A stretch of 64,000 nucleotides of DNA, taken from assembly GCF_003918875.1 (NCBI RefSeq), contig NW_025765187.1:1-64000 (forward strand). The letters are read 5' to 3'. The first letter of the stretch is position 1. Every line of letters begins with the position of its first letter. This document shows, one piece after another, positions 6,235 through 61,518 of this stretch. Position numbers and translations under genes: made by a program. Below the pieces are notes generated by a model. That model searched no databases, was not told the DNA's origin, and saw only the letters and a program-made list of their open reading frames with translations. The DNA comes from Haliotis rubra. Taxonomy: Eukaryota.

Positions 6235-7868
6235 CGGCCCATGTAAATATCTGCAGTGTTTGCAAAGTACAAGGGAAGACAACTCCTGCCACCTCGTGGT
6301 GCTCCGTCTGTGACGATGTCTTCTGTGATGGATGTCTGGAGATGCACAACATGATGCCAATGTCACGTGACCATGAAGTTGTGGGTTTGTCTGATACTAC
6401 CAAAAGAAAAGCCAAGCAACGCCTCATGTGTAAACTCCACAAAGACGAACAGATTAAGTTGTTCTGTAAGGATTGTAGGGTGGCCATTTGTCATACATGC
6501 TGCAGTATAAAACACAGGAAATGTGACGATGTTGATACTTTAAATAACATGACGCCTGTTGTCAGAGAACACCTGTCAAATCAAACCCAAGAACTGAAAA
6601 TCAAAATGACAACTTCAGAAAAGAGAATTACTTTCAGGAAATCTCAAATTGAAGAAATAGAGTCCAATGCGCAAATTATAAAAGATGAAATCAGACAATT
6701 ACGTCAGAAAGTGGTAGAAGTGATTTTACGGAAGGAGAAACAACTCCTTGATAAAGTCGACCGATCTTCCGATGAACAATTACAGGAATTACAAGCAGAT
6801 ATAAAATCCCAGGAGATTGAGCTGCAGATGTACCAGCAACAGTATGAGTTCACAGCCAAAGCTGTCACGTCCAACTGTGAGGTGGACATGTATGCCATCT
6901 ATGAGTCGGTGGGTGAGGAGTCGACAGACAACAGAGACAGGGACAACCGACCAGCGCCAGGAAGGGTTGTATTTACTCACGACATGGACAAGCTGAGTAA
7001 AGCAGTGGATGAACTACAGCTAGGGAAGGTTGAAGTTGTCAGAGGTGTGAGTGACCACCAGTCTACCCCTGTTCTACATCACACTATTGACTGTAAGGCA
7101 GATAATGACATCAGGTATCCTGAATTGTATGACGTCACAGTGTTGACTGTTGAGGGTATAAAAGTAACAGTAGTTGCGGACTACAATAACAAAAGCATCA
7201 AAACATATCACACATCAAAACCAAACACACTAAGTAATCATCTACTACTTTCCTATAGTCCTTATCAACTAGCAAAGCTAAATGAGAGTCGGATAGCTGT
7301 CAGTTTTCCGGGCAGTCAGGAAATAGTTACAGTGGATGTTACTCCAGATCCTGTATTGTTGTCAACTATCAAAACAAGTAAAAGGTACTTCGCTCTAGCC
7401 TGTCTGAGTCCTTCACAGCTGGTGGTGGCAGGTACAAAACTACAGTCTCACTATGTGGACATACTGGACATGACAGGGAGGATACTGAAGTCTATCAACA
7501 CGGGTGTCATAAAGAATCCAAACTGTATCCATGTCACCAGTAATAACAACTTGATAGTTAGTAAAGGATCAGTAAAATCCCTCGTATCTGTGACCAGGGA
7601 AGGAGAAGCTGTTTTCACCTACACACCCACAGGGGACAGAGCTTTGAGATGGCCATTGGGTATCACAACAACAAGCACTGGGGATATCCTGTTTGTAGAC
7701 CGCGTCTCCCACAAGGTGATTCAGCTGACAGAGTCAGGGCAGTTTGTCAGAGATGTCCTCACACAACAGGATGGTCTGGAATATCCTTGTGGTATCTGTC
7801 TTGATGGGGACGGGTTTGTGTATGTTACATGTGAGCGATATGTAAAGGTATTCAAATTTAACAAGTGA
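6235..7868 (+). CDS. TRIM-NHL copy 1, coding exon 2 (B-box1, B-box2, coiled coil, NHL beta-propeller); TRIM2/3/56/71-like E3 ligase
   Basis: Acceptor TTCTTTGCCATTACAG|CG at 6234/6235. CSVC...CSVCDDVFCDGCLEMH...DH (B-box1), CKLH...FCKDCRVAICHTC...H (B-box2), a heptad-rich segment, and NHL-type repeats (LRWPLGITTTSTGDILFVD, LEYPCGICLDGDGFVYV). Open frame to TGA 7868. Confidence 0.93.
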
Positions 7869-8632
7869 TTCGTGTTTCAAATATACTCTTACAAAAAGTT
7901 GGTGAATATTATTTTTAATTTACGATTGATAAAGCTGGGAGATATATCGGAGCAATCAATGTTGATGATAATGGACATTTTGAGAGTGCATCACCACTTA
8001 CACAAACTTATGGCCATAGTAGTTTGTACAGAAATAGCTCTTAAAAGATGATTGGTGTATGATGTGAAAACCGTCAAAATCCAGAATGACACCGGATGCA
8101 CGTGTATGGGGCACTGCGTTGTGCACGTGCATCCCATGCATTGTGTTTAGGGGCGGTGATAAAAAGACATGGCTGTGCGTTCATAAGATGTCTGTCTTGG
8201 AAACATTTGTTAACTCTTATACTTCCTATCTAAATTTGAAGTTCAGGTTCAGGCTTTTGTGAAGAGTATACGGACATAATTCGATCACACAACACAATAT
8301 CTGTTACAAGCCAACTTCAGGTACTGTTTATGGCTTTTCATGTAATTCTTAAAGTTAGCACATTGACGAAACACTGGATCTCATGTTTCATAACAAATAG
8401 TTTTAATCACAGAGATGAGACTAGCGTTGATGAAGAAAACAGTGACAAACATCCATTATTATCATATTATTCTTCATTTTTGCCAGGTCCAATGTGGTTT
8501 AACATGATGGTACGACAAAATGCAGTTATTCCAAAATAATCTAAAGTGCGACTCATGAACTATCTATCCGTAAAATCGCATTGATATGCTTTTCGGCACT
8601 TCTACAGTAATGTTTATGTATTATGAATATTC

Positions 8633-10989: not shown

Positions 10990-12457
10990 GGACGGGAGGG
11001 ACGTCAGAGTGGTTGGGGCGGGTAGGGTGGACGGGAGGGGGTCAACGTGAGTAGGGTGGGTAGGGTTGACGGAGGGGGTCAAAGTGAGTAGGGGCGTGTA
11101 GGGTTGGCAGGAGGGACGTCAAAGTGGGTGGGGCGGGTAGGGTGGACGGGAGGGGGTCAAAGTGAGTAGGGACAGGTAGGGTGGGCGGAGGGACGTCAGA
11201 GTGGGTGGGGCGGGTAGGGTTGACAGGAGGGACGTCAGAGTGGTTGGGGCGGGTAGGGTGGACGGAGGGACGTCAAAGTGGGTGGGGCAGCTAGGGTGGA
11301 CGGGAGGGACGTCAAAGTGGGGTGGGGCGAGTAGGGTGGACGGGAGGGGGTCAAAGTGAGTAGGGGCAGGTAGGGTAGACGGGAGGGACGTCAGAGTAGG
11401 TGGGGCGGGTAGGGTTGACGGGAGGGACGTCAAAGTGGGTGGGGCGGCTTCGGTGGACGGGAGGGACGTCAGAGTGGTTGGGGCGACTAGGGTGGACGGG
11501 AGGGACGTCAGAGTGGGAGGAGTGAGTAGTAGGGATGTAACGATTCACTCTCACTTCGATTCGATACGATTATCGATTCAATTCGTTCGATTCGATTCAC
11601 CAAAGCTGAAGACAAAGTCAAATTTGTTGTAGAATCAGTTTAATTTGGCAGACTTTGAAAAATCGGTACAATGCACCATTAGAACACTGTCAAGACATGT
11701 TGTCAACAAATACCCACTGAACAAGTGATCATGAAATTAAGTTTCAGTCACGAACTTTGGTGTCAAGTGTTCATTGTGACTGTAATGTCACTGTAAGTCA
11801 TTTGGAATGATCATGTTCGGTGCAAGGAATTTTCACTTGAAAGACATACCCTCTGGGCACTTACAATGTCTCCGGCAATGGAGAATACCCTCTCAATGGC
11901 CACACTTGTAGAAGCGAATTTTCAACATAATTTCTTACGATTTCAGATGAAATAAACTCTTAGTATTAGAATGTAAGTACTGTATGAATCGAAGCGAAAT
12001 GGATGCATTTGAAATCGAGATCGAATCGTACATCTATCGATCCGATTTTCGATGAACCGAACCGAATCGTGACACCCCTAGTGGGTACGGAGGACGGTGG
12101 GGACGTCAGAGTGGGTTGGGTGGGTACGGTGGACGGGGAGACGTCGAAGTGGGTGGGGCGGGTAGGGTAGACAGGAGGGATGTCAGAGTGGGTGGGGCGG
12201 GTATGGTAGACGGGAGGATTTCAGAGTGAGTGGGGCGGATAGGGTAGACGGGAAGGACGTGAAAGTAGGAAGGACGGGTAGGATGGACGGGAGGGACGTC
12301 AGAGTGAGTGGAGCGGGTAGGGTAGACGGAGGGACTTCAAAGTAGGTAGGACGGGTAGGGTGAACAGGAATGACGTCAGATAGGGTGGGACGGGTAGGGT
12401 GGAGGGAGGGTGGTCAGATAGGGTGGGACGGGTAGGGTAGAGGGGAGGTCCGTCAGA
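10990..12457 (+). repeat. G-rich 39-bp minisatellite with G-quadruplex potential, split by a MITE
   Basis: Consensus GGGAGGGACGTCAGAGTGGGTGGGGCGGGTAGGGTGGAC repeated at 10990-11529 and 12081-12457. Confidence 0.92.
11530..12080. mobile_element. Non-autonomous hAT-like MITE (551 bp)
   Basis: TIRs TAGGGATGTAACGATTC / GAATCGTGACACCCCTA, subterminal (CGATT)n motifs, and an imperfect 8-bp TSD GTGAGTAG / GTGGGTAC. Confidence 0.85.
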
Positions 12458-15168
12458 TAAAATAATAGGGCATAAAATTTCCTATTACTTCATATTCACC
12501 ATCCAAAAACACAAACAAGAGATTTCTCAAGTAAAATTCATTAAAATACCCAGTCAAGTACAGAAACAAATATAATAAACCCGTATACACACAAAAATGA
12601 GCATCGATTTATATTCAAAACAACCAGGTAACACACTCACCAACGATTTGATTTAAATATCAATTGAAGATGTTCACATTACATATATTTCAGAAAATTG
12701 CCTAATCGAAAGACTCATTATATGTGTTATGTTGATTCCAGAGACTTGAAAAGTTATTATAAACAAGTGTTTGTACTTTGAAACGAGCACATACCCGTCG
12801 TCAGTATATAACGTGAATGAATAGATGTCGAGTGACACACACGACGACGACCAGGAAGTGGAGCGGGGACAGTCTGTCGATTCACGGTGTTGTAATTGTG
12901 GTAAGTCTCACGTTAATATGACACAATACAAACATAGATATTACTACCTATAACAGTACCTTGTGTTTTTAGCCAACATTTCTTCTGATTTTGGACTGTT
13001 ATCTGGGGAGTAAGGGAAGGTTAGTTAACTTAGTTTCAGCACAGGTTAGGACAGAGGTTTCGCTTTAATACAGAAAGTAGACTTGGAATCAACATGGACT
13101 AACGTATGTTCTGATGTCGTGTCAGCTGTTGAAATGTCAGTGCTGAAAACGGCTACCTATCTTAGTATCAACATTCATGAACACGCAGTTTTAAGACAAA
13201 TTAGTACAGTATATCACAGCTTTGAGGCGATGGACATGATTTCACCAGAGTTATGTCCCTTTATACATCGCGCGATTTGCAATGTGCAGCCGCTACATCT
13301 TGATCGCTTTGGACGCGCGCGTGTGCGAATGTGCGTGCGTGCTCGAGTGCGTGCGTGATTGATGTTTACACAATTAATAGACTTTGCTATAGACTGGTCC
13401 AGACTCGATTATTTACAGACCGCCGCCATATAGCTGGAATATTGCTGAGTGCGGCGTAAAACAAGAAGCAACAACTCTTCTGTGTATTGTTAATCAGCAC
13501 ATTCAGTATGAAGATAAAAGAGTTAGTCGACCAGACAAACCAGTGATTTTAATGATTCATCCTGCCCGAGTACTACGAAAGAGACCCGTTAAGATCCAGG
13601 TTAGAATTGATCTTCAGTAACCCATGCTTGTAAGAGGAGTGAATGGTAAGGCTCGATGACTTGGTTGACACGTCATGGGCTCCCAATTGCGTAGATCGAC
13701 GCTCATGATGTTGATCATTGGATTGTCTGGTCCAGACACAATTATGTACAGCTGGAATATTGCTGAGTGTGGCGTTAAACAACCACTAAACAACCAACTA
13801 ACCAACCAAGAAAGAGTAAGAGCTGCGTGGTTATACAAAAACAAACTTAGCCCTACGACTGTCCTAAGTTTAAGTTAAGGTATGGAAGTTATAATCACCT
13901 AAGAGCAAAAATCACTCTGTGGAACGGCACCAGGTTCCTGGCCAAGGGATCTTCACGAGATCTTAGTTCATATTAACTGAGCACGAATATTTTCTCAATT
14001 GGGTCTCTATCTTAAGAGTTAAGACAAAACATAGACTTAAGTTATTTCATGATCCCGGAGTCTGGTGATGTAGACTACAAGAATCAGGACCAGTTTTAAC
14101 CTGGAACTATCTCTCTGTGGGTGCATGAGTGCGTGTGAGACGTTGCGAAAAAAGTATTTCTCACGCACTTGTCATTTTATTGTCAGGGTTAGGATTAGAG
14201 CGCATCTCATCTAGAGGAATGTTGCCCATTCTTGTTGTATGTTTATTGCTCATTGTCTAAGAAATAATCAAGTTTTGTGATAATGGTCTGAAGACAACTG
14301 AATCTGGACCAGACAATCAATGATTAACATTGCATCAAGGAGCAAATTATATGGGATGCCGTGCATCAAACACGTCTGAAGGTCCGACAACACGAAAATA
14401 ACCGAGTATGGACCCGACAATCCAGTGATTAAAGTGAGATTAATGAGTAATGTGTATCGGATGACAGGCATCAAATAAGTCTGTGAGTCTGACCACACCA
14501 TCCTACTACTTGCTTTATACAGCAAGCATGGGAAGCTGATGACAACCCAGACGTTGAAATCATGATAAAGGGCAGTGTGGTAGCATAGTGGTAAACGCAA
14601 TCGCTTGTAACGCCGAAGACCCTTGTTTCATTCATGGGTACAATGTGTGAAGCCTATATCTGGTGTCCCCTGCCTTGAAATCGCTGGAATATTGCTAACT
14701 CACTCACTCACTCGTGGCGATATCACCTATCAGCTCAGATTACCTACTTGCCCTCCTTTAACATTATGACTATTAACGAAACGTCGATTCCTTCATAATA
14801 CAGAAGCTGAAATCCATACTTTCTCCACGGAGATGTTATTAGACTGTGACACTAGAACAGAGAACCATCAAAACCAGAGAACCCACTATCTTTGTTAATA
14901 CTGATAAACTGACGTCATCCCTTCAGGATGGTCTAAGGGAAGTAACTCTTCCCGTATACGATCTCAAGTCCTCGAAAACACATTTGGTCTAAGTGCATGA
15001 TTAAGGTTTCACAACAAAGGTGACCGTCACTTCCGAGTGCTTCCTTGGCCGATTCCTTAACGGGGAACGAGTATCATGGTCTCAGGTCTAGGAACTAATT
15101 TTGGATGAGATCAACACGTCCAACACTGAATGTACAGGTATGTATGTACTTCTGATAGTCTGCTCATA
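12456..15168 (+). other. Ghost TRIM repeat unit: promoter/exon 1 plus downstream flank, coding exons absent
   Basis: 12456-13357 aligns to about 484-1340 (ETS motif 12852, donor GTAAGT 12901). 13905-15168 aligns to about 9645-10960. No RING or NHL sequence lies between. Confidence 0.8.
13395..13810 (+). mobile_element. SINE-like family B: 3' fragment (13395-13472) and a near-complete copy (about 13580-13810)
   Basis: GAGACCCGTTAAGATCCAGGTTAGAATTG...CCCAATTGCGTAGATCGACGCTCATG...GGTCCAGAC...GCTGGAATATTGCTGAGTGTGGCGTTAAAC with an (AACC)n tail. It shares its 3' motif with family A. An antisense copy is at 63110-63340. Confidence 0.75.
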
Positions 15169-15174
15169 GGATAT

Positions 15175-15395
15175 AGGATATTTATATAGCGCACATATCC
15201 ACGCAACTAGTGCATGCTCAAGGCGCTGGTATTTTTCCCCCTCGATCATTGGATGTCAATCTCAACGGCACATCGTATTATCAATCTCAACTCTCTGGGT
15301 AGTATACAACTCTTGCAGCCATTAGGCGCACCGAGGTATTGCGGCTTTCTAATCCTAACGAGGTACCCATTCACAGCTGGGTGGACTAGGACACA
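15175..15395 (-). mobile_element. 5'-truncated SINE with a Deu/Nin-like core and an L2-like tail
   Basis: Minus strand has AGTCCACCCAGCTGTGAATGGGTACC, resembling the Deu/Nin-domain core as I recall it, and ends AGCGCCTTGAGCATG...GTGCGCTATATAAAT. Confidence 0.6.
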
Positions 15396-25116: not shown

Positions 25117-26236
25117 TTCTGAAAGACTTTAAGCCGTGCAGTACACCATACCATGTAAAGCAAACGGGTATTTATCATTTAGACAAGAGATAATTCCACA
25201 TCGACCCGTATGTTAAACTTAGTATAGCACGATTTATTTTCCTGAATGAGTGTTCAAAACATATGACGTAGCTGTGATGTAATTAGTAAAACAATTGTGG
25301 GATAACTGGTTCTAAACCATGTGCATAATTATGACTTCAAATTTACATGCAAAACCTCGCACATATCCACCTCATAAAATGACCATTATTCATGTTACTC
25401 TAATAAGCATGCAAGACATGACCTACTCCGAATACCTATCACAGAACTCAGTCACTCTGCAAAGGCGCAACTACCCGTACCCACAGCCCGAGACAGTAGC
25501 AACGACCCTTTAGCGTACAGCTTGGTTTCAGTCAAAACAAAGGCTTGAGACTTTCACAATACATGCATTGGGCATTTATAAAATATATCTGCCTTATGCC
25601 TGCATAGAAAATGTCTAATTGTATGAAATAAACCATCTATATTACCTTGATTGACAGATTTAGATTTAGATAATTTTTCGTAAGGCACGATCACGTGATC
25701 TGAAATGCGACAGTAAATCATCCGGTTAAAGAGGATGAATGAATGTCACCTCATAAATATAGTAGTTAAGGGTACAAGAAGGCTTCATCTTTCGACACAA
25801 AAACGTTAAGCCTGTTCTATTCAAAATATTGTCTGTAATTACCGTGAACGTGAAGCCTGGGTTGTCCCTGAAAAACTGTACAGTGGAAAATGGGTTGTTG
25901 CAAAGGTTTTCATGTACAGTCGAATACCCCCTGCGAATATACTCACTGTGTATTGTTAATAAACATATGGATTAAAGCCACAAGAGTTATCCCCCTTTCA
26001 CATCAGAGGCACTGAAGAATGCAGAATATCTTTCGTGCCAGGAGGTGTCTTCTGTCGTCAGTGATATTCTCACTGCGCATGTCTTATTAAGATATAACGA
26101 CTTTTGACGTCGGGATGTTGCCTACATTTAAACGTTTCAAGAAGGCAAAACAGTTTTGTTGTTTTAGACCATATTCTCTTTAAAACTGCAAAAGCCGCAT
26201 TCATATATATTTATACCATGTATTCCTCTTCAGATA

Positions 26237-28526
26237 ATGGCGGCTGCCAAAATATTGACAGACAACCACCTCACCTGTGTCATCTGTACCGAGGTGTTCA
26301 CAGACCCTGCCACACTTCAGTGTAATCACACATTCTGTAAGTCCTGTCTGTTGAAATACACCAACACACAGCCTGAAGCAATACAAGCCAAGTCCATCCC
26401 ATGTCCCTCCTGTAGACAACTGACGAAGGGGGCCACCCCTGACAGTCCAGTAGAGGAGTGGGTCAGTCAGCTGAAACCAAGCCATGTCATACAAGGGCTG
26501 ATGGACGACTTCGGACCAGGGAGCAAAGGTAACGAATTGACACTTGACGTCCAATGATTATTTTTAAATGTTGTGGAAATATGTAAAAAATGTCTTTTGT
26601 TGTAATTTTAAGATGGAATGAATATATACAATCAATGAATGATGTATGAAATATTTTCATTTGACTATATTTCAATTTTTCTGGTGTTTGGTATCCTTAC
26701 ATCAGTCGACATTTATTATCGACATTTGCATTGATTCTTCTCACATTCTTATTATTTTGAAATTCAATTTCCAACACTATAATTTGTCTCTAAGTTAATT
26801 ATTGTACAATGTAACTGATTCTAGGAAATTTCAATACACTTATATATGTGTTCCTTTATCCAGAACAAAAACAGCTTGTTCTTTGCCATTACAGCGGCCC
26901 ATGTAAATATCTGCAGTGTTTGCAAAGTACAAGGGAAGACAACTCCTGCCATCTCGTGGTGCTCCGTCTGTGACGATGTCTTCTGTGATGGATGTCTGAA
27001 GATGCACAACGTGATGACGATGTTACGTGACCATGAAGTTGTGGATGTGTCTGATACCACCAAAAGAAAAGCCAAGCAACGCTTCATGTGTAAAATCCAC
27101 AAAGACGAACAGATTAAGTTGTTCTGTAAGGATTGTGGGATGGCCATTTGTCACACATGCTGCAGTATAAAACACAGGAAATGTGACGATGTTGATACTT
27201 TAGATAACATGACCCCTGTTGTCAGAGAACACCTGTCAAATCAAAAGCACGAACTGAAAATGAAAATGACAACTTCAGAAAACAAAATAATGTTCAGGAA
27301 ATCTCAAATTGAAGAAATAGAGTCCAATGCGCAAAGTATAAAAGATGAAATCAGACAATTACGTAAGAAAGTGGTAGAAGTGATTTTACGGAAGGAGAAA
27401 CAACTCCTTGATAAAGTCGACCGATCTTCCGATAAACAATTACAGGAATTAAAAGCAGAAATAAAATCCCAGGAGATTGAGCTGCAGATGTACCAGCAAC
27501 AGTATGAGTTCACAGCCAATGCTGTCTCGTCCAACAGTGAGATGGACATGTATGCCGTCTATGAGTCAGTGGGTGAGTCAACAGACAACAGAGACAGGGA
27601 CAACCAACCAGCACCAGGAAGGGTTGTATTTACTCACGACATGGACAAGCTGAGTAAAGCAGTGGATGAGCTACAGCTAGGGGAGGTTGATGTTGTCGGT
27701 GGTGTGAGTGACCACCAGTCTACCCCTGTTCTACATCACACTATTGACTGTCAGGCAGATGATAATGACATTGGGGAGCCTGAATTGTTTGACGTCACAG
27801 TGTTGACTGTTGATGGTATAAAAGTAACAGTAGTTGCAGATAACAATAACAACAGCATCAAAACATATCAAACATCAAAATCAAACACCCTAAGTAATCG
27901 CCTACTACTTTCCTATAGTCCTTATCAAATAGCAAAGCTAAGTGAACGTCGGATAGCTGTCAGTGTTCCGGGCAGTCAGGAAATAGTTACAGTGGATGTT
28001 ACTCCAGATCCTGTATTGCTGTCAACTATCAAAACAACTAAAAGCTACTTTGCTCTAGCCTGTCTGAGTCCTTCACAGCTGGTGGCAGGTACAAATAGAC
28101 AGTCTCACTCTGTGGACATACTGGACATGACAGGGAAGATACTGAAGTCTATCAACACGGGTGTCATAAAGAATCCAAACTATATCCATGTCACCAGTAA
28201 TAACAACTTGATAGTCAGTGAAGCATCAGTAAAATCCCTCGTATCTGTGACCAGTGAAGGAGAAGCTGTTTTCACCTACACACCCACAAGGGACAGAGCT
28301 CTGATGTATCAACGGGGTATCACAACAACCAGCACAGGAGATATCCTGCTTGTAGACCGCGACTCCCACAAAGGTGATTCAGCTGACAGCGTCAGGGCAG
28401 TTTGTCAGAGATGTCCTCACACAGCAGGATGGTCTGGAAGATCCTCGTGGTATCTGTCTTGATGGGGACGGGTTTGTGTATGTTACATGTAGGCGATATG
28501 TAAAGGTATTCAAATTGAAAAAGTGA
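26237..28526 (+). pseudogene. TRIM-NHL copy 2, join(26237..26528,26895..28526); +1 frameshift near 28371 (pseudogene, truncated allele or sequence error)
   Basis: Splice sites are as in copy 1. CACAAAGG replaces CACAAGG, giving a stop at 28462 (619 aa, last NHL blades lost). Removing one A restores a 640-aa frame ending at TGA 28526. Confidence 0.85.
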
Positions 28527-28987
28527 GACGTGTTTCAAATATACTCTTCAAAAAAGTAGGGTGATTTGTTTTCATTTACGATTGATAAAGCTGGGAGATA
28601 TATCGGAGTAAATCAATGTTGATATGATGATAATGAACATTTTAGAGTGCATCGCCACTTGCGCTTCCTGATGACCATAGTTTGTACAGTAATCGCTGTA
28701 AAAGGATGATTGGTATATGATGTGAAATTTGCATGTGTACGATGTTCATTCAGTTGTATGTGATTCCAGCAAACAATTGTATACCAGATGCAAGATGATT
28801 GTAAACAATGATGGTCTACAGTGATTTATCGACTAGCTTTGAAAACCGTCAAAATCCAGAATGACACCCAATGCACGTGTATGGGGCTAATGCGTTGTGC
28901 ACGTGCATCCCATGCGTTTTGTTTAGGGTTGGTGATCAAGAGAAATGCCTGTGCGTTCGTAAGATGTCTGTCTTTGAAGCTTTTGTT

Positions 28988-29389
28988 GACATGACAGGGA
29001 GGATACTGAAGTCTATCAACACGGGTGCCATAGAGAATCCAGACTGTATCCATGTCACCAGAAATAACAACTTGATAGTCAGTGAAGGAAAAGTAAAATC
29101 CCTTGTATCTGTGACCAGTGAAGGAGAAGCTGTTTTCACCTACACACCACCCGGGGACAGAGCTCTGAAAAGGCCATGGGGTATCACAACAACCAGCACA
29201 GGAGATATCCTGCTTGTAGACCGCGACTCCCACAAGGTGATTCAGCTGACAGAGTCAGGGCAGTTTGTCAGAGATGTCCTCACACAACAGGATGGTCTGG
29301 AATATCCTTGTGGTATCTGTCTTGATGGGGACGGGTTTGTGTATGTTACATGTGGGCGATATGTAAAGGTGTTCAAATTGAAAAAGTAA
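28988..29389 (+). pseudogene. Orphan NHL C-terminal cassette (copy 2b), open frame
   Basis: DMTGRILKSINTG...VFKLKK* is fused to 3' UTR sequence at GAAGCTTTTGTT|GACATGACAGGG. The first 39 codons of ORF 28871-29389 are UTR-derived. Confidence 0.85.
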
Positions 29390-30866
29390 GACGTGTTTCA
29401 AATATACTCTTATAAAAAGTAGGTGGATTTTATTTTTCATTTACGATTGATAAAGCTGGGTGATATATCGGAGTAAATCAATGTTGATATGATGATAATG
29501 AACATTTTAGTGTGCATCGCCACTTGCGCTTCCTGATGACCATAGTTTGTACAGTAATCGCTCTAAAAGGATGATTGGTGTATGATGTGAAATTTGCATG
29601 TGTACGATTTGCATTCAGTTGTATGTGATTCCAGCAAACAACTGTATAACAGATGCAAGATGATTGTCAAAAACGATGGTCTACAGTGATTTATCGACTA
29701 GCTTTGAAAACCGTCAAAATCCAGAATGACAACCTATGCACGTGTATGGGGCTACTGCGTTGTGCACGTGCATCCCATACGTTGTGTTTAGGGTTGGTGA
29801 TCAAGAGAAATGGCTGTGCGTTCATAAGATGTCTGTCTTTGAAGATTTTGTTGACTCTTGTACTTCCTATCTAAATTTAAAGTTCAGGTTCCCCTGCTTT
29901 GTTTTAAGAGTATGTGAACATAATTCGATCACACAACACAATATCTGTTACAGGCCAACTTCAGGTACTGTTTATGGCTTTTCATGTCATTCATAAAGTT
30001 AGCACATTGACCAAACACTGGATCTCATGTCTTATAGCAAATAGTTTTAATCACAGATGGGTGAGACAAACGTTGATGAAGAAAACAGTAACAAATATCC
30101 ATTATTATCATTTTATTCTTCATTTTTTCAAGGTCCAATGTGGTTAAGTGACTCACGAACTGTCTATCCGTAAAATCGAATTTATATGTTTTTCTGCATT
30201 TCTATAGGAATGTTTATGTATTATGAATATTCAATAAATATACTGCTAAAACTCACTCAGTAACTCACTCACTCACTCCACAGAAGTACCTCTGTGGCCA
30301 CCATTTTTCTGAATAACTACAATCCATCTCCTGTATATTAGTTGTACAAGTACTCCCTACCACAGAGCCTAGATCTTGTATGGAAGTCACGAAGACATAA
30401 GGGCGAAGATCGCTGTGTCGGACAAGGTGGTGGGGTAGCCTAGCAATTTAAGCGTTCGTTCGCCATGCCGAAGATACGGGTTCGATTCTCCACGAGTTTA
30501 CAATATGTTAACCCCATTTCTGGTGTCCCTCACCGTGATATTGCTGGAATATTGGTAAAAGCGGCGTAAAACTAAACTCACTCACCTCCGAGGAACAATT
30601 TGACATTTTACAATACAAATATAGCGATAATTTTGATAAAAATTAGAGCTTAGATCGCTCTGTGGAACAGCATCAGGTTCCTGGCCAAGGGACCTTGAAA
30701 GAAATATTTTGCTGAGCACGAATATTTTCTTATTTAAGTCTTAAGAGTTAAAACAAAACATAGAGTTATTTTCATGATCCCAGAGCCTGGTTGTGATGTA
30801 GACAAGAATTAGGACCAATTCTAACCAGGAACTCTGTGTGTGTGAAAAGTTGAGAGAAAACAAAGA

Positions 30867-30966
30867 CTGACTGACTGAATGAGTTTGGTTTTCGCCGCTT
30901 TTAGCAATATTCCAGCAACATCACGGCCGTGGACACCAGAAATGGGCTTCACACATTGTACCCATG
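30867..30966 (-). mobile_element. 5'-truncated family-A SINE with a 13-bp TSD; shared with 50693-50793
   Basis: Flanked by GAGAAAACAAAGA / GAGAAACCAAAGA. The empty site GAGAGAAACCAAAGAAG is at about 9873-9889. Confidence 0.85.
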
Positions 30967-37652: not shown

Positions 37653-39969
37653 ATGGCGACTGCCAAGATACTGACAGACCACCACCTCACCTGTGTCATC
37701 TGTACTGAGGTGTTCACAGACCCTACCACACTTCAGTGTAATCACACATTCTGTAAGTCCTGTCTGCTGAAATACACCAACACACAGCCTGAAGCAATAC
37801 AAGCCAAGTCCATCCCATGTCCCTCCTGTAGACAACTGACGAAGGTGACCACCCCTGACAGTCCAGTAGAGGAGTGGGTCAGTCAGCTGAAACCAAGCCA
37901 CGTCATACAGGGACTGATAGATGACTTTGGACCAGGGGGCAAAGGTAACGAATTGGCACTTGACGTTCAATGATTATTTTTAAATGTTGTGGAAATATGT
38001 ATAATACGTTTGAGTCAGTTGTGGAACAAAATTTGTGTTTTGTTGTAATTTTTAAATTGAATGAGTTTATACACTCCATGAATAATTTATGGATATTTTG
38101 ATTTGAGAACACTATTTCAATTTTTCAAGTGTTTGCTTTTCTGTAAACCCGATACATTAACGACATTTATTTTCGACATTGATTACTTCTCAAATACTTC
38201 TTGTCTTGAAAATCAACTTTCCAACACCGTCATTTGTATCTAAGTTAATCTACTTGGAGTGCGTCTGATTCTAGGAAATTTCCATGCCCTAATGAATATG
38301 TTCCTTTACCCAGAAGAAAATCCAGATTGCTCTTTGTCATTACAGCGGCCCTTGTAAATATCTGCAGTGTTTGCAAAACACAAGGGAAGGCAAGTCCTGC
38401 CATCGGTGCCCGTGGTGCTCCGTCTGTGACGAGGTCTTCTGTTATGGATGTCTGAAGATGCACAACATAATGACAATGTTACGTGACCATGAAGTTTTCG
38501 GCGTGTCTGATACTACCAAAAGAAAAGCCAAGCAACGCTCCATGTGTAAAATCCACAAAGACAAACAGATCGAGTTGTTCTGTAAGGATTGTAGGATGGC
38601 CATTTGTCATACATGCTGCAGTATAAAACACAGGAAATGTGACGATGTTGATACTTTAGATAACATGATCCCTGTTATCAGAGAACACCTGTCAAACCTG
38701 AAACTCAAAATGACAACTTCAGAAAAGAGAATTATCTTCAAGAAATCTCAACTTGAAAAAACAGTGTCTAATGCGCAAAGTATAAAAGATGAAATCAGAC
38801 AATTACGTCAGAAAGTGGTAGAAGTGATTTTAAGGAAGGAGAAACAACTCCTTGTTAAAGTTGATCGGTTTTCCAATAAACAATTACAGGAATTACAAGC
38901 AGAAATAAAATCCCAGGAGATTGAGCTGCAGATGTACCAGCAACAGTATCAGTTCACAGTAAATGCTGTCACGTCCAACTGTGAGATGGACATGTATGCC
39001 GTCTATGAGTCTGTTGGTGAGGAGTCGACAGACAACAGAGACACGGACAACCGACCCGCACCAGGAAGGGTTGTATTCACTCACGACATGGACAAGCTGA
39101 GTAAAGCAGTGGATGAGCTACAGCTAGGGGAGGTTGAAGTTGTCAGTGGTGTGAGTGACCACCAGTCTACCCCTGTTCTACATCACACTATTGACTGTAA
39201 GGCAGATGATGACAGTGGGGGTCCTGATTTGTTTGACGTCACAGTATTGACTGTTGATGGTATAAAAATAACAGTAGTTGCAGACTACACTAACAACAGC
39301 ATCAAAACATATCTAACATCAAAACAAAACACACTAAGTAATCGTCTATACGTTTCCAATTGTCCTCGTCAAATAGCAAAGCTAAATGAGCGTCGGATAG
39401 CTGTCAGTGTTCCGGTGAGTCAGGAAATAGTTACAGTGGATGTTACTCCAGATCCTGTATTGCTGTCAACTATCAAAACAACTAAAAGCTACTTCGCTCT
39501 AGCCTGTCTGAGTCCTTCACTGCTGGTGGCAGGTACATAAGAACAGTCTCACTCTGTGGACATACTGAACATGACAGGGAGGACACTGAAGTCTATCAAC
39601 ACGGGTGTCATAAAGAATCCAAACTATATCCATGTCACCAGTAATAACAACTTGATAGTCAGTGAAGCATCAGTAAAATCCCTCGTATCTGTGACCAGTG
39701 AAGGAGAAGCTGTTTTCACCTACACTCCCACAAGGGACAGAGCTCTGATGTATCAACGGGGTATCACAACAACCAGCACAGGAGATATCCTGCTTGTAGA
39801 CCGCGACTCCCACAAGGTGATTCAGCTGACAGCGTCAGGGCAGTTTGTCAGAGATGTCCTCACACAACAGGATGGTCTGGAAGATCCTCGTGGTATCTGT
39901 CTTGATGGGGACGGGTTTGTGTATGTTACATGTAGGCGATATGTAAAGGTATTCAAATTGAAAAAGTGA
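37653..39969 (+). pseudogene. TRIM-NHL copy 3, join(37653..37944,38346..39969), disrupted
   Basis: A 5-nt insertion GGTGC (38405-38409) shifts the frame in B-box1 and gives a stop at 38453-38455. There is also an in-frame TAA at 39538-39540 and a 12-nt deletion in the coiled coil. The RING exon is intact. Confidence 0.9.
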
Positions 39970-41011
39970 GACGTGTTTCAAATATACTCTTCAAAAAAAG
40001 TAGGTGATTTGTTTTTCATTTACGATTGATAAAGCTGGGAGATATATCGGAGTAAATCAATGTTGATATGATGATAATGAACATTTTAGAGTGCATCGCC
40101 ACTTGCGCTTCCTGATGACCATAGTTTGTACAGTAATCGCTGTAAAAGGATGATTGGTATATGATGTGAAATTTGCATGTGTACGATGTTCATTCAGTTG
40201 TATGTGATTCCAGCAAACAATTGTATACCAGATGCAAGATGATTGTAAAAAATGATGGTCTACAGTGATTTATCGACTAGCTTTGAAAACCGTCAAAATC
40301 CAGAATGACACCCAATGCACGTGTATGGGGCTAATGCGTTGTGCACGTGCATCCCATGCGTTGTGTTTAGGGTTGGTGATCAAGAGAAATGCCTGTGCGT
40401 TCGTAAGATGTCTGTCTTTGAAGCTTTTGTTAACTCTTATACTTCCTATCTAAATTTAAAGTTCAGGTTCCCCTGCTTTGTTTTAAGAGTATGTGAACAT
40501 AATTCGATCACACAACACAATATTTGCTACAGGCCAACGTCGGTACTGTTTATGGCTTTTCATGTCATTCATAAAGTTAGCACATTGACCAAACACTGGA
40601 TCTCATGTCTTATAGCAAATAGTTTTAATAACAGAGGTGAGACAAACGTTTATGAAGAAAACAGTAACAAATATCCATTATTATCATTTTATTCTTCATT
40701 TTTTCAATGTCCAATGTGGCTTAAGTGTGACTCACGAACTGTCTATCCGTAAAATCGAATTTATATGTTTTTCTGCATTTCTATAGGAATGTTTATGTAT
40801 TATGAATATTCAATAAACATACTGCTAAACCAAACTCACTCAGTAACTCACTCACTCACTCAATTCACAGAAGTACCTCTGTGGCCACCATTTTTCTGAA
40901 TAACTACAATGCATCTCCCTTATATTGGTTGTACAAGCACTCCCTACCACAGAGCCTAGATCTTGTATGGAAGTCACGAAGACATAAGGGCTAAGATAGC
41001 TGTGTGGGACA

Positions 41012-41445: not shown

Positions 41446-41994
41446 TCCGAGGAAAAATGTTACGTTGTACAAAACAAACAGCGCTACGATTTAGTTTTGA
41501 TAAAAATTAGAGCTTAGATGGCTCTGTGGAACAGCATCAGGTTCCTGGGCAAGGGATCTTGATAGATATTTGAGTTTACCTCTCGCCAAGCAATAGTCCA
41601 GTTTTGTAAAAAAAGTCTGAAGATATCCAAACGCGAGTCTGGACCAGACAATCCAGTCATGAACATTACATCTCTGACGTAGTTGAATAGGATGACATTG
41701 ATCAAACAGGTTAGCAAATCTGACCACACAAAAACTTCCAAGTCTGGCCCATGACATCAGTGAGCAATTTGTATGGGATGACATGCATCAAACAAAGCTG
41801 AAAGTCTTACAACACGAAAATATCCTAGTCTGGACCAGACAATCAAGTGATTAACATGACATCAGTACCTTGTATAGGATGACATTCATCAAACTAGTCT
41901 GTGAGTTTGACCACACGATCGATCCTACTAGTTGCTTTATACAGTACGCTTGGGAAGCTAGGGACCAACCACGCACTGAAATCATCATAAAAGG

Positions 41995-42178
41995 TGGTGG
42001 GTAGGGTAGACGGGAGGGACGTCAAAGTGGGTAGGACGGGTAGGGTGGACGGGAGGGACGTCAAAGTGGGTAGGACGGGTAGGGTGGACGGGAGGGACGT
42101 CAGAGTGGGTAGAACGGGTAGGGTGGACGGGAGGGACGTCAGATTGGGTGGGGCGGGTGGGAGGGGATGGGATGGGAA
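41995..42178 (+). repeat. G-rich 39-bp minisatellite, about 4 copies
   Basis: Units GGGTAGGGTGGACGGGAGGGACGTCAAAGTGGGTAGGAC, the same family as 10990-12457. Confidence 0.9.
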
Positions 42179-42589
42179 AGGCTTATCCGAGGGTTCACAA
42201 AGACCGTGGTCAAGACTACCAGTTGTTCGACTTCCATTTTGTGGAAAAGCGAAGGCTGAGTGGGTTAGACAGCTGACTTTGTGTGCTGGTGATAAGGTAC
42301 TGCCTCTGGGGTATTGGGTCCAATCCTGGATAGACCTTAACCCAACAAAACACTAGAATCTGTACTCTACTGAGGAAGTGTAATCCAAAATATAACATGT
42401 ATGGCAACTCTCTTTCTTACAAAGCACAACATTCGTCTTCATTCAGTTTATTTAGCAAACGGCCTCAGGCGAGCCCTTGAACACAACACACATTTGACGT
42501 GAACGTCTCATATAGTGATAACTACAAGTTCGTGCGGGTAGCGACACTTTTATCAGCAGGCAAGAGAAAAGAATCACTTGGAATTCAGA

Positions 42590-47577: not shown

Positions 47578-49205
47578 CGGCCCTTGTAAATATCTGCAGT
47601 GTTTGCAAAACACAAGGGAAGACAACTCCTGCCACCTCGTGGTGTTCCGTCTGTGACGAGGTCTTCTGTGATGGATGTCTGAAGATGCACAACATGATGA
47701 CGATGTTACGTGACCATGAAGTTGTGGGCGTGTCTGATACCACAAAAAGAAAAGCCAAGCAACGCTTCATGTGTAAAATCCACAAAGACGAACAGATCGA
47801 GTTGTTCTGTAAGGATTGTAGGGTGGCCATTTGTCATATATGCTGCAGTATAAAACACAGGAAATGTGACGATGTTGATACTTTAGATAACATGACCCCT
47901 GTAATCAGAGAACACCTGTCAAATCAAAACCAAGAACTGAAAATCAAAATGACAACTTCAGAAAACAGAATAATTTTCAGGAAATCTCAAATTGAAGAAA
48001 TAGAGTCCAATGCGCAAAGTATAAAAGATGAAATCAGACAATTACGTAAGAAAGTGGTAGAAATTATTTTACGGAAGGAGAAACAACTCCTTGATAAAGT
48101 CGACCGATCTTCCGATGAACAATTACAGGAATTACAAGCAGAAATAAAATCCCAGGAGATTGAGCTGCAGATGTACCAGCAACAGTATGAGTTCACAGCC
48201 AATGCTGTGACGTCCAACTGTGAGATGGACATGTATGCCGTCTATGAGTCAGTGGGTGAGTTGACAGACAACAGACACACGGACAACCGACCAGCACCAG
48301 GAAGGGTTGTATTCACTCACGACATGGACAAGCTGAGTAAAGCAGTGGATGAACTACAGCTAGGGAAGGTTGACGTTGTCGGTGGTGTGAGTGACCACCA
48401 GTCTACCCCTGTTCTACATCACACTATTGACTGTAAGGCAGATAATGACAATGACGATCCTTATTTGTATGACGTCACAGTGTTGACTGTTGATGGTATA
48501 AAAGTAACAGTAGTTGCAGATATCACTAACAAATGCATCAAAACATATCAAACATCAAAATCAAACACACTAAGTAATCATCTACTACTTTCCTTTTGTC
48601 CTCATCAAATAGCAAAGCTAAGTGAGAGTCGGATAGCTGTCTGTGTTCCGGGCAGTCGGGAAATAGTTACAGTGGATGTTACTCCAGATCCTGTATTGTT
48701 GTCAACTATCAAAACAGCTAAACAGTACTACGCTCTAGCCTGTCTGAGTCCTTCACAGCTGGTGGCAGGTACAAATAGACAGTCTCACTCTGTGGACATA
48801 CTGGACATGACAGGGAAGATACTGAAGTCTATCAACACGGGTGTCATAGAGAATCCGGACTATATCCATGTCACCAGTAAAAACAACTTGATAGTCAGTG
48901 AAGAATCAGTAAATTCCCTCGTATCTGTGACCAGTGAAGGAGAAGCTGTTTTCACCTACACTCCCACAGGGGGCAGAGCTTTGAAAAGGCCACAGGGTAT
49001 CACAACAACCAGCACAGGAGATATCCTGCTTGTAGACTGCAACTCCCACAAGGTGATTCAGCTGACAGAGTCAGGGCAGTTTGTCAGAGATGTCCTCACA
49101 CAACAGGATGGTCTGGAAGATCCTCGTGGTATGTGTCTTGATGGGGACGGGTTTGTGTATGTTACATGTAGGCGATATGTCAAGGTATTCAAATTGAAAA
49201 AGTGA
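47578..49205 (+). CDS. TRIM-NHL copy 4, coding exon 2 (B-boxes, coiled coil, NHL)
   Basis: Acceptor ATTACAG|CG at 47577/47578 and an uninterrupted frame to TGA 49205, with the same domains as copy 1. Confidence 0.93.
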
Positions 49206-60532: not shown

Positions 60533-60654
60533 CAAAGAACATGAAGCACTAGGAATCCCTATGTAGGAATCCCTATGTAGGAATCCACAATGTATTGGGG
60601 GCCTTCTTTGCCCTGGAATCCCTTCAGCACAACAAGCACGAGGTCCTGAGGTCA

Positions 60655-61470
60655 CATTCTGCCCCTGGACTCCCATCAACAAGCATGTACTGGGGGCCCA
60701 TTCTGCCCCTGGACTCCATCAACAAGCATGTACTGGGGGCCCATTCTGCCCCTGGACTCCATCAACAAGCATGTACTGGGGGCCCATTCTGCCCTGGACT
60801 CCATCAACAAACATGTACTGGGACCCATTCTGCCCTGGACTCCATCAACAAGCATGTACTGGGGGCCCATTCTGCCCCTGGACTCCATCAACAAGCATGT
60901 ACTGGGGGCCCATTCTGCCCTGGACTCCATCAACAAGCATGTACTGGGGGCCCATTCTGCCCTGGACTCCATCAACAAACATGTACTGGGGACCCATTCT
61001 GCCCTGGACTCCATCAACAAGCATGTACTGGGACCCATTCTGCCCTGGACTCCATCAACAAACATGTACTGGGGACCCATTCTGCCCTGGACTCCATCAA
61101 CAAACATGTACTGGGGACCCATTCTGCCCTGGACTCCATCAACAAACATGTACTGGGGACCCATTCTGCCCTGGACTCCATCAACAAGCATGTACTGGGG
61201 ACCCATTCTGCCCTGGACTCCATCAACAAGCATGTACCATGGGGGACCCATTCTGCCCTGGACTCCATCAACAAGCATGTACTGGGGCCCATTCTGCCCT
61301 GGACTCCATCAACAAGCATGTACCGGGGACCCATTCTGCCCTGGACTCCATCAACAAGCATGTACTGGGGGCCCATTCTGCCCTGGACTCCATCAACAAG
61401 CATGTACCGGGGACCCATTCTGTCCTGGACTCCATCAACAAACATGTACAGGGGGCCCATTCCGCAGTGG
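60655..61470 (+). repeat. 42-bp intronic minisatellite, about 19 copies
   Basis: Unit CCATTCTGCCCTGGACTCCATCAACAAGCATGTACTGGGGGC with +/-1 variants in the G/C runs. Confidence 0.95.
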
Positions 61471-61518
61471 AATCCCAACAGACATATAAGTTAGTTATAA
61501 GTATATAGATAAACCTAC

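What the first reader, a model, noticed from the sequence alone, without database searches (positions are those of the whole stretch)
28020..29850. Copy 2 is a patchwork gene followed by a spare, different NHL C-terminal cassette
Seen: copy 2 switches affinity within about 200 nt. It reads TTKSYF (as copy 3), GTNRQSHSVDILDMTGKI (as copy 4), then from VIKNPNY through about 460 nt of 3' UTR it is near-identical to copy 3 (39590-40430). At 28987/28988 the sequence jumps back about 865 nt via a GAC microhomology (UTR GTTGAC-TCTTG vs coding CTGGAC-ATGAC) into a second, open-frame NHL half (2b). That half has a unique loop combination: EYPCG as copy 1, KRP and ENPD as copy 4. Inference: gene conversion plus a microhomology-mediated template switch; 2b and pseudogene copy 3 could act as silent donors of NHL loop variants.
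Basis: partly seen in the sequence, partly recalled or inferred. Interest (0 to 1): 0.7.

Follow-up and report, generated by a model that had tools for sequence, protein, structure and literature searches.

The report
Paralogue-copied insertion in abalone TRIM-NHL gene
In a row of four blacklip-abalone TRIM-NHL ubiquitin-ligase genes, one copy carries an extra 0.86-kb piece copied from the neighbouring dead copy, which has pushed its own original gene end downstream; this looks like an ordinary one-off germline rearrangement in a fast-evolving gene family, not a working store of spare parts.

Summary
The window is Haliotis rubra contig C297, with four tandem RING/B-box/coiled-coil/NHL genes. 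In copy 2, 28124-28990 and 28988-29855 form an 864-nt head-to-tail repeat (93.7% identity) that shares GAC at the joint.

- **Proximal unit (2a):** 98.9% identical to pseudogene copy 3 from about 28146 to 28987. Copy 2 and copy 3 are only about 92% identical upstream (Fisher 1e-14; breakpoint 28140-28169, permutation p<=0.0005; trees 100/99).
- **Distal unit (2b):** open in frame. It and its flank are closest to copy 4, so it is copy 2's own displaced 3' end.

- 2a carries a private +1 A at 28368-28370 that ends the ORF at 28462. It sits in a homopolymer of a 30x Nanopore assembly and may be an error.
- The "3' UTR" is a 510-bp MITE.
- A RING exon lies upstream.
- NCBI's 792-aa model joins 2a to 2b through a predicted intron.

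Best reading: one non-reciprocal template-switch event copied from copy 3. The "silent donor" idea has no support: 2b is open because the event is young, and older orphan NHL halves on another contig are decaying. The joint could not be checked with reads, so an assembly artefact remains possible (about 15%). Earlier scan notes describe similar conversion mosaics in other arrays of this genome.

The parts
26222..26540 (+). RING-finger exon of copy 2 (approximate limits)
   Evidence: tblastn of NCBI model P0001. Pfam RING families are precomputed for P0001 and P0002. The block is 97% conserved between units (D5).
26894..28123 (+). Native 5' part of copy 2's main exon: two B-boxes, coiled coil and the first 12 of 24 propeller strands
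   Evidence: ORF; Pfam B-box. It groups with copies 1 and 4, not copy 3. Strand count comes from the AF2 model of copy 4.
28141..28168 (+). Interval holding the in-register (homologous) crossover from copy-2-type to copy-3-type sequence
   Evidence: MaxChi breakpoint between informative sites 28140 and 28169, permutation p<=0.0005.
28124..28987 (+). Unit 2a: NHL strands 13-24 plus 461 nt of MITE-derived flank. From about 28146 it is 98.9% identical to copy 3.
28368..28370 (+). A-run with one extra A, private to 2a. It shifts the frame at propeller strand 20 and the ORF then stops at 28460-28462. It may be a Nanopore homopolymer error.
   Evidence: Alignment; translation; assembly method.
28432..28926 (+). 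Intron predicted in NCBI model P0001 (GT..AG, 495 nt). It links the frameshifted 2a frame to the frame that runs into 2b. Its support is unknown.
28985..28990 (+). Non-homologous joint: MITE flank (…GTT) joined to the coding sequence. GAC at 28988-28990 is shared by both units.
28988..29389 (+). Unit 2b: copy 2's own displaced last 133 codons plus TAA. The frame is open, and 864 = 3 x 288 keeps it in register with the 5' part.
   Evidence: (NHL repeat, E 7e-9).
29404..29913 (+). MITE directly after the stop codon of 2b (15-nt terminal inverted repeats). The duplicated unit ends inside it at 29855.
   Evidence: More than 25 dispersed copies at about 80% identity; empty site in the C2500 paralogue; inverted ends.
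39568..40431 (+). Probable template: the NHL half and MITE flank of pseudogene copy 3
   Evidence: 99% identical to 2a. Copy 3 keeps the normal single-copy structure.
38403..38407 (+). 5-nt insertion in B-box 1 of copy 3 (frameshift)
39538..39540 (+). In-frame TAA in copy 3
48804..49205 (+). Equivalent NHL half of intact copy 4. Its flank is the closest relative of 2b's flank.
7467..7868 (+). Equivalent NHL half of intact copy 1

Best explanation
Copy 2 was an ordinary intact TRIM-NHL gene: RING exon, then a main exon running through what is now 2b. A single germline repair or replication accident then changed it.

1. A growing DNA end left copy 2 between 28141 and 28168.
2. It paired in register with the neighbouring pseudogene copy 3, 11.4 kb away.
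3. It copied about 0.85 kb: the last 12 propeller strands (three blades' worth) plus 460 nt of the MITE that follows the stop codon.
4. It then jumped back to copy 2 out of register, 17-45 nt behind where it had left. That joint (28987/28988) has at most 3 nt of microhomology.

The result mimics an 864-nt tandem duplication. Its first unit is copy-3 sequence and its second unit (2b) is copy 2's displaced native end.

- **Shown:** the two joints, the identity pattern, the tree conflict, and the unchanged copy 3.
- **Inferred:** the direction (copy 3 to copy 2), the single-step mechanism (MMBIR/FoSTeS-like template switch, or SDSA ended by end joining), and the consequences.

As assembled, copy 2 now encodes a propeller cut at strand 20. 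If the extra A is a sequencing error, it instead encodes a full protein with copy 3's last three blades, and 2b lies untranslated downstream. Nothing indicates programmed or repeated use of 2b.
For: - Repeat geometry and the shared GAC.
- Tract identity 833/842 against about 92% upstream, Fisher 1e-14, breakpoint p<=0.0005.
- Tree conflict: 2a groups with copy 3 at 100/99 and 99/98, while copy 2's 5' part groups with copies 1 and 4.
- 2b is nearer to copy 4 than to 2a (flank 97.8% vs about 95%; 2b plus downstream is 96.8% identical to copy 4 over 5 kb). So 2a is not a diverged copy of 2b.
- Copy 3 has no duplication, so the event was non-reciprocal.
- The left crossover lies within 45 nt of the re-entry point. 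That is about a 2% coincidence if duplication and conversion were separate events.
- 2b looks like a normal gene-attached half, with 1 change at invariant residues.
- The RING exon and 5' part of copy 2 are intact.
Against: - The joint is seen only in this assembly. Public runs gave short unitigs, none listed as bridging it, and none held more than 51% of the words.
- 2a differs from both 2b and copy 3 at 28137, inside the short stretch that should be copy-2 native on both sides.
- The base at 28988 is G where copy 3 has A, so either the microhomology was near zero or the tract ended earlier.
- The 2a/copy-3 tract is slightly more diverged from copy 4 (about 5%) than copy 3's own downstream flank is (about 2.5%). 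That leaves the direction open.
- Several 2a vs copy 3 differences are homopolymer-type, so fine details, the frameshift included, may be errors.
Confidence: 0.55

Rival explanations
1. Two separate events. First, a plain 864-nt tandem duplication inside copy 2, through the GAC microhomology of copy 2's own flank and coding sequence. Later, gene conversion of nearly the whole first unit by copy 3.
For: - With copy 2's own flank (GTTGAC, as at 29850-29855) the joint has a clean 3-nt microhomology. The G at 28988 then needs no extra explanation.
- Conversion is common in this family (scan note s1-327988).
- An independent, older partial tandem duplication exists on C2142.
Against: - It needs the conversion tract to start within 45 nt of the duplication start by chance (about 2%).
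- It needs the tract to fill 92-98% of the unit.
- It requires two rare events where one suffices.
Confidence: 0.2
2. Assembly artefact. The animal has one NHL half at copy 2, perhaps with one allele converted by copy 3. The Nanopore meta-assembly placed two versions in series.
For: - The assembly used 30x Nanopore data, wtdbg and DBG2OLC merged with QuickMerge, one Pilon round, and a genome with 1.3-1.4% heterozygosity.
- The duplicated unit matches the divergent region almost exactly, as a flattened bubble would.
- Several 2a vs copy 3 differences are homopolymer-type.
- No independent data bridge the joint.
- At 28178, all laid contigs from four other runs show the 2b/copy-4 base.
Against: - It requires two joins 850 nt apart, one of them between non-homologous positions (MITE to coding). 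Overlap-based assemblers do not create that kind of join.
- Nanopore reads would span the whole 1.7 kb.
- The 5' part is clearly copy 2, not copy 3 (91-92%).
- Neighbouring ORFs (copy 1, copy 4, copy 2's 5' part, 2b) are free of indels, so the local consensus is good.
- The runs laid are other individuals or species.
Confidence: 0.15
3. Functional cassette arrangement. 2b (and copy 3) are kept as donors for repeated conversion into the expressed gene, or 2b is used as an alternative 3' coding segment through the intron that NCBI predicts.
For: - 2b is open and has a unique mix of variable residues.
- A pseudogene did donate sequence once.
- The family is diversifying: dN/dS is 0.5-1.9 in the NHL half.
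- NCBI model P0001 splices into the 2b frame.
- Orphan NHL halves recur: C2142 twice, and one in H. rufescens.
Against: - There is a single cassette and a single event.
- 2b's open frame is explained by youth.
- 2b contains no conversion tracts.
- Older orphans are decaying.
- The predicted donor site is weak, and the model passes through 21 frameshifted codons.
- No transcript evidence was obtainable.
- The apparent H. rufescens case P0004 turned out to be an annotation merge.
Confidence: 0.05

Closest known systems
Interlocus gene conversion from a pseudogene into a neighbouring gene in tandem arrays (textbook cases: CYP21A1P into CYP21A2, GBAP1 into GBA; from my own knowledge)
   Same: Non-reciprocal copying of a sub-kilobase tract from a dead paralogue about 11 kb away. 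Identity rises sharply within the tract, the donor is unchanged, and the recipient is probably damaged.
   Different: Only the left end is homologous. The right end is an out-of-register joint that adds 864 nt and displaces the native end. The species and family (abalone TRIM-NHL) are new for this.
Replicative template switching, FoSTeS/MMBIR, and templated insertions at duplication joints (from my own knowledge)
   Same: A short backward jump, a joint with 0-3 nt of microhomology, an inserted piece copied from a nearby similar sequence, and a duplication-like outcome.
   Different: The mechanism is inferred from one finished product. The microhomology is no better than about 5% chance. SDSA followed by end joining fits equally well.
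Silent-cassette variation systems (Neisseria pilE/pilS, Borrelia vlsE, chicken immunoglobulin pseudo-V genes; from my own knowledge)
   Same: A full gene lies next to 5'-less partial copies of its variable part, and sequence has moved from a dead copy into the gene.
   Different: There is no array of cassettes, no sign of repeated or somatic transfer, no conserved recombination flanks were looked for or seen, and older orphan halves decay.
TRIM-NHL proteins (TRIM2, TRIM3, TRIM71/LIN-41, Brat, Mei-P26, Thin)
   Same: RING, B-box, coiled coil and a six-bladed NHL propeller. The AF2 model matches TRIM2/3/71, Thin and Brat NHL structures at TM 0.73-0.81.
   Different: Only 14-19% sequence identity to the solved domains. 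There is no filamin domain. This is a lineage-specific tandem expansion in Haliotis with variable NHL positions.
Fast-evolving tandem TRIM arrays with a variable recognition domain (primate TRIM5/22, fish finTRIM; from my own knowledge)
   Same: A tandem family, a constant ligase end, a variable C-terminal domain, birth-and-death evolution and conversion mosaics.
   Different: The variable domain here is NHL, not B30.2/SPRY. No ligand or immune role is known.

Membership tests
TRIM-NHL protein family | N-terminal RING finger | tested here: met
   Precomputed Pfam RING families on NCBI models P0001 (copy 2) and P0002 (copy 1). The exon maps to about 26222-26540.
TRIM-NHL protein family | B-box zinc finger(s) | tested here: met
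   PF00643 E 1e-9 and PF22586 E 2e-8 in copy 4, and the same families in copy 2.
TRIM-NHL protein family | Coiled coil between the B-box and the C-terminal domain | not tested
   A heptad-rich, charged region is visible in the translation, but no coiled-coil predictor was run.
TRIM-NHL protein family | C-terminal six-bladed NHL beta-propeller | tested here: met
   PF01436 hits. AF2 model has pLDDT 88.9 and 24 strands. Foldseek top hits are the TRIM2, TRIM3, Thin, TRIM71, Mei-P26 and Brat NHL domains, E down to 5e-14.
Interlocus gene conversion | Tract of sharply higher identity between two paralogues, with a statistically supported breakpoint | tested here: met
   9/839 vs 104/1285 mismatches (Fisher 1e-14). 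MaxChi breakpoint 28140-28169, p<=0.0005.
Interlocus gene conversion | Tree conflict between the tract and its flanks | tested here: met
   2a groups with copy 3 at 100/99 and 99/98. Copy 2's 5' part groups with copies 1 and 4, and copy 3's 5' part with C2500.
Interlocus gene conversion | Non-reciprocal: the donor keeps its structure | tested here: met
   Copy 3 has one NHL half and a normal flank.
Interlocus gene conversion | Homology on both sides of the tract (classical conversion) | tested here: not met
   The right end is a MITE-to-coding joint with no homology beyond GAC. This is therefore conversion-like copying that ended in a non-homologous join.
Microhomology-mediated template switch (FoSTeS/MMBIR) | Microhomology at the novel joint | tested here: inconclusive
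   3 nt (GAC) with copy 2's own flank, but 0-2 nt if copy 3 (A at the position aligned to 28988) was the template. Three or more nt occur at about 5% of random joints.
Microhomology-mediated template switch (FoSTeS/MMBIR) | Inserted segment templated from nearby sequence | tested here: met
   The segment is 98.9% identical to copy 3, 11.4 kb downstream.
Microhomology-mediated template switch (FoSTeS/MMBIR) | Origin in replication or break-induced repair | not testable with these tools
   Only the end product is available.
Silent-cassette diversification system | A maintained set of silent partial copies | tested here: not met
   There is one young orphan here. The older orphans on C2142 are 16% diverged: one is frameshifted, the other has 7 changes at invariant residues.
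Silent-cassette diversification system | Repeated transfer of cassette segments into the expressed gene | tested here: not met
   No 2b-derived tract was seen in copies 1, 3 or 4. 2b's own coding part shows only site-by-site alternation. Population data were not available.
Real structure rather than assembly artefact | Independent reads or contigs bridging 28987/28988 | tested here: inconclusive
   Four public runs were laid as short unitigs and none was listed as bridging. An ORF search with the joint-spanning frame found nothing. No second copy exists in the assembly.

The most novel reading that the evidence does not exclude
Half-propeller swapping with retention of the displaced half is a recurrent way in which the abalone TRIM-NHL family makes new recognition surfaces. 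Three-blade modules would be copied between paralogues, dead ones included. The displaced halves (2b here, and the orphans on C2142 and in H. rufescens) would persist for a while as a reservoir that can be copied back or spliced in.
Probability: 0.06. Interest if true: 0.6.

Novelty: new member of a known kind. Interest (0 to 1): 0.25.

Why it matters
This is a clean, datable example of how a tandem, fast-evolving receptor-like family is reshaped. A dead copy supplied half a propeller to a live neighbour in a single copying accident that also left the original half behind. It documents birth-and-death and conversion dynamics in a mollusc-specific TRIM-NHL expansion.

It also flags a misleading reference annotation: a 792-aa model with one and a half propellers. 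Beyond that it is ordinary. It does not open a new mechanism, and nothing shows that the spare half is used.

Tried and rejected
1. **Reads.** No bridging contig was listed, so the joint, the extra A and expression all stay untested.
2. **ORF search.** A word search with the joint-spanning ORF (28871-29386) looked for independent ORFs containing the joint. It found only two H. rufescens fragments.
3. **MITE end coincidence.** I first thought the duplication ended exactly at the end of the dispersed repeat. That came from where my query ended; the MITE runs 58 nt further.
4. **Common start of paralogue matches.** The apparent shared start at the 2b boundary was likewise caused by the query.
5. 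**H. rufescens P0004.** This 799-aa protein begins with an NHL half and looked like a second spare cassette. It is an annotation merge of the tail of one gene with the next gene.
6. **Exact-run GENECONV-style test.** It fragments the tract at the few mismatches. MaxChi and Fisher tests were used instead.
7. **Loop enrichment.** Positions with three or more states are not enriched in loops over strands by DSSP of the model (12/60 vs 13/71, p = 0.83). The face of the propeller could not be tested because coordinates are not returned.
8. **Direction of transfer.** Divergence profiles along copy 3 were suggestive only.
9. **tRNA scan of the very abundant repeat at 30418-30685.** Nothing found.
10. 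**Literature.** Two full-text searches for mollusc or abalone TRIM-NHL expansions returned nothing useful.
11. It was redone from files.
Full report
**What the locus is**

The window is the first 64 kb of a 236,676-bp contig (C297) of a 1.38-Gb animal genome. Protein matches identify it as Haliotis rubra, the blacklip abalone. NCBI models from the same contig appear among the hits.

Four homologous units lie head to tail on the + strand. Each has a RING-finger exon followed, after an intron, by one large exon. That exon encodes two B-boxes, a coiled-coil region and an NHL domain.

An AlphaFold model of the C-terminal 291 residues of copy 4 is confident (pLDDT 88.9) and has 24 strands, that is six four-stranded blades. 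Its best structural matches are the NHL propellers of TRIM2, TRIM3, Thin, TRIM71, Mei-P26 and Brat (TM 0.73-0.81). These are therefore true TRIM-NHL genes, part of a large Haliotis-specific expansion.

State of the four copies:
- Copies 1 (main exon to 7868) and 4 (to 49205) are intact.
- Copy 3 is a pseudogene. It has a 5-nt insertion in B-box 1 (about 38403-38407) and an in-frame TAA at 39538-39540. Its last 133 codons are still open.

**Checking the observation**

- Self-comparison aligns 28124-28990 with 28988-29855 at 93.7% identity with three gaps. This is an 864-nt head-to-tail repeat whose units share GAC at the joint.
- The first unit (2a) matches copy 3 at 833 of 842 aligned positions from 28146 to 28987. 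Genome-wide, copy 3 is its best match at 99%.
- The second unit (2b) is open from 28871 to the TAA at 29387-29389. It carries the stated mix of ENPD and KRP (as copy 4) with EYPCG (as copy 1).

The switch to copy 3 is far beyond chance.
- At sites where copies 3 and 4 differ, copy 2 follows copy 4 at about three quarters of sites up to 28140, then follows copy 3 at 41 of the last 43 sites. The MaxChi permutation p is <=0.0005.
- Mismatches between copy 2 and copy 3 fall from 104/1285 to 9/839 (Fisher 1e-14).
- Maximum-likelihood trees put 2a with copy 3 (100/99 for the coding half, 99/98 for the flank). The 5' part of copy 2 sits with copies 1 and 4.

The smaller "patches" are not convincing.
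- Across 27900-28050, copy 2 is only 91.4% identical to copy 3.
- In 2b, copy-1-like and copy-4-like sites alternate one by one without any tract.
- A 3-nt microhomology occurs at about 5% of random joints.

1. *A private frameshift in 2a.* One extra A in the run at 28368-28370 is absent from copies 1, 3, 4 and 2b. It shifts the frame at propeller strand 20 and ends the ORF at 28462.
2. *The "3' UTR" is a transposable element.* It is a 510-bp MITE (29404-29913 in the 2b unit) with 15-nt inverted ends and dozens of copies at about 80% identity across the genome. A paralogue on contig C2500 preserves the empty site. The duplicated unit ends 58 nt before the MITE's end.
3. *The NCBI model for copy 2.* P0001 (792 aa) reads through the frameshifted 2a, then uses a predicted GT..AG intron (28432-28926) to enter the frame that runs into 2b. 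The product has one and a half propellers. Whether RNA supports that intron is unknown.

**Which half is native**

2b and everything downstream of it match copy 4 at 96.8% over 5 kb. In the MITE, 2b is 97.8% identical to copy 4 but only about 95% identical to 2a. So 2a is not a diverged duplicate of 2b; it belongs to the copy 3 lineage.

The offset of 864 (3 x 288) means that the 5' part up to 28123 and 2b from 28988 are in the same frame. 2b has only one change at residues that are invariant in nine gene-attached copies, which is within the range of those copies themselves (1-4). 2b is therefore copy 2's own original end, displaced downstream.

**How it most likely arose**

There are two novel joins.
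- The left join is in register and lies between 28141 and 28168.
- The right join is out of register, from the MITE flank to the coding sequence, and re-enters copy 2 only 17-45 nt behind the left one.

Copy 3 is unchanged, and the 11.4 kb between the copies is neither deleted nor duplicated. That rules out unequal crossing-over. A single non-reciprocal copying event explains both joins at once: a DNA end leaves copy 2, copies about 0.85 kb from copy 3, then jumps back a few tens of bases behind. This could be an MMBIR/FoSTeS-type template switch, or synthesis-dependent annealing that ended in end joining.

The alternative is a plain tandem duplication later overwritten by conversion. It needs the conversion tract to begin within 45 nt of the duplication start by chance, roughly 2%. 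It does, however, explain the G at 28988 and the clean GAC more simply.

I rate the single event at about 0.55 and the two-step version at about 0.2. The direction (copy 3 to copy 2) is favoured by the argument above but not proven. Along copy 3, the tract is slightly more diverged from copy 4 (about 5%) than copy 3's own downstream flank is (about 2.5%).

**Is it real?**

The assembly was built from 30x Nanopore reads. It used wtdbg and DBG2OLC, two Racon rounds and one Pilon round, QuickMerge and Purge Haplotigs, on an animal with 1.3-1.4% heterozygosity (PMC6774278). Two cautions follow from that.
- Several of the nine differences between 2a and copy 3 are homopolymer-length differences, the extra A among them. 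Short-read polishing is weak where two copies are 99% alike. The frameshift may therefore be an error. If it is, copy 2 encodes a complete protein with copy 3's last three blades, and 2b lies untranslated behind it.
- The duplicated unit coincides almost exactly with the region where a copy-3-converted allele would differ from an unconverted one. That is what a flattened heterozygous bubble would look like.

Against an artefact:
- the right join is between non-homologous positions, which overlap-based assembly does not produce;
- it would take two errors 850 nt apart;
- Nanopore reads span the whole structure;
- the neighbouring ORFs are free of indels.

The public runs hold at most 51% of the stretch's words and exist only as short unitigs. 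No bridging contig was listed. At 28178, all laid contigs in all four runs carry the 2b/copy-4 base, which suggests these are other animals or species without the 2a sequence. A search for independent ORFs containing the joint found none. I leave about 15% for an artefact.

**The "silent donor" idea**

The family does vary.
- Pairwise dN/dS in the last 131 codons is 0.5-1.9.
- 2b's coding part is more diverged from copy 4 (28/404) than its flank is (10/462, p = 0.0007). This agrees with another first-stage note on this stretch.
- The excess also holds for synonymous sites (8/92, p = 0.004). So it reflects mixed histories as much as selection.

Variable positions are not enriched in loops over strands by the model's DSSP (p = 0.83). 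I could not test the propeller faces.

Orphan NHL halves do recur.
- Two genes on contig C2142 are each followed by a 460-nt partial copy, from an independent 680-nt duplication.
- A 5'-less fragment is annotated as a 175-aa protein in H. rufescens.

These older orphans are decaying. They are 16% diverged from their neighbour. One is frameshifted. The other has seven changes at otherwise invariant residues, including in the most conserved strand-loop stretch. A further apparent case (P0004) was an annotation merge.

So 2b's open frame reflects its youth, and nothing shows it or copy 3 being used repeatedly. Earlier scan reports on other arrays of this genome describe the same picture: conversion mosaics and many broken copies. 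I did not re-test those windows.

**Verdict**

The functional speculation is not supported.

This is a new instance of a known kind of event: paralogue-templated insertion, or gene conversion ending in a non-homologous join, in a tandem array. It occurs in a mollusc-specific TRIM-NHL family. It carries modest interest, and the joint remains unverified by independent data.

Noticed in passing
window 29404-29913 (also 28541-28987 truncated, 39983-40490, 49220-49730, 7882-8270): A 510-bp MITE with 15-nt terminal inverted repeats sits about 15 nt after the stop codon in all four units. More than 25 copies at about 80% identity lie elsewhere in the genome. The paralogue on contig C2500 keeps the empty site. 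Copy 1's MITE has a deletion of about 120 nt at 8065.
   Followed up: partly
window 30418-30685 and inverted partial copies at 30866-30966: An extremely abundant short repeat (summed unitig depth in the millions in all four runs) with many copies in the fetched loci. It looks SINE-like, but ARAGORN finds no tRNA-like part.
   Followed up: partly
G000:C2142:2379-2838 and 14881-15345 (loci L031, L032): Two full TRIM-NHL genes are each followed by a 460-nt partial copy of their own NHL end. This comes from an independent 680-nt tandem duplication, later carried along by a 12.5-kb segmental duplication. The copies are 16% diverged: one is still open, one is frameshifted.
   Followed up: yes
window 38371-39567 vs G000:C2500 (L038 6715-8417): The 5' part of pseudogene copy 3 groups with a gene on another contig (C2500, 100/99 support) rather than with its own neighbours. 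Its 3' part and flank are like its neighbours. Copy 3 is therefore itself an older mosaic.
   Followed up: partly
window 26222-29389 (NCBI model P0001, LOC124266560): The reference annotation gives copy 2 a 792-aa product with one and a half propellers. It invents or uses an intron at 28432-28926 that bridges a frameshifted stretch. This is likely a rescue of a broken ORF by the pipeline.
   Followed up: partly
L041 (H. rufescens JALGQA010000044.1, 3411429-3445417): NCBI model P0004 (799 aa) fuses the last 130 residues of one TRIM-NHL gene to the whole of the next gene 12 kb away. The upstream gene is split into a 319-aa model. This is an annotation artefact around a probably broken gene.
   Followed up: yes
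window 11096-12403 and 41961-42204; window 60590-61517: There are minisatellites of 39-nt and 42-nt units. The 42-nt array carries overlapping ORFs of 150-300 codons on both strands and has raised GC (0.47).
   Followed up: no
window 29715-29731 / 29834-29850: A 17-nt imperfect inverted repeat (76% complementary) ends two bases before the stretch GTTGAC where the duplicated unit ends. It might have favoured stalling, but it is weak.
   Followed up: no
G000:C2142:23303-24205 and G000:C1298:16183-17085: Two genes have a RING exon but a main exon that lacks its first 730 nt or so (homology starts at copy-4 position 48291). C1298 (59.8 kb) may be an unpurged haplotig or a further duplicate of the C2142 array.
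   Followed up: no
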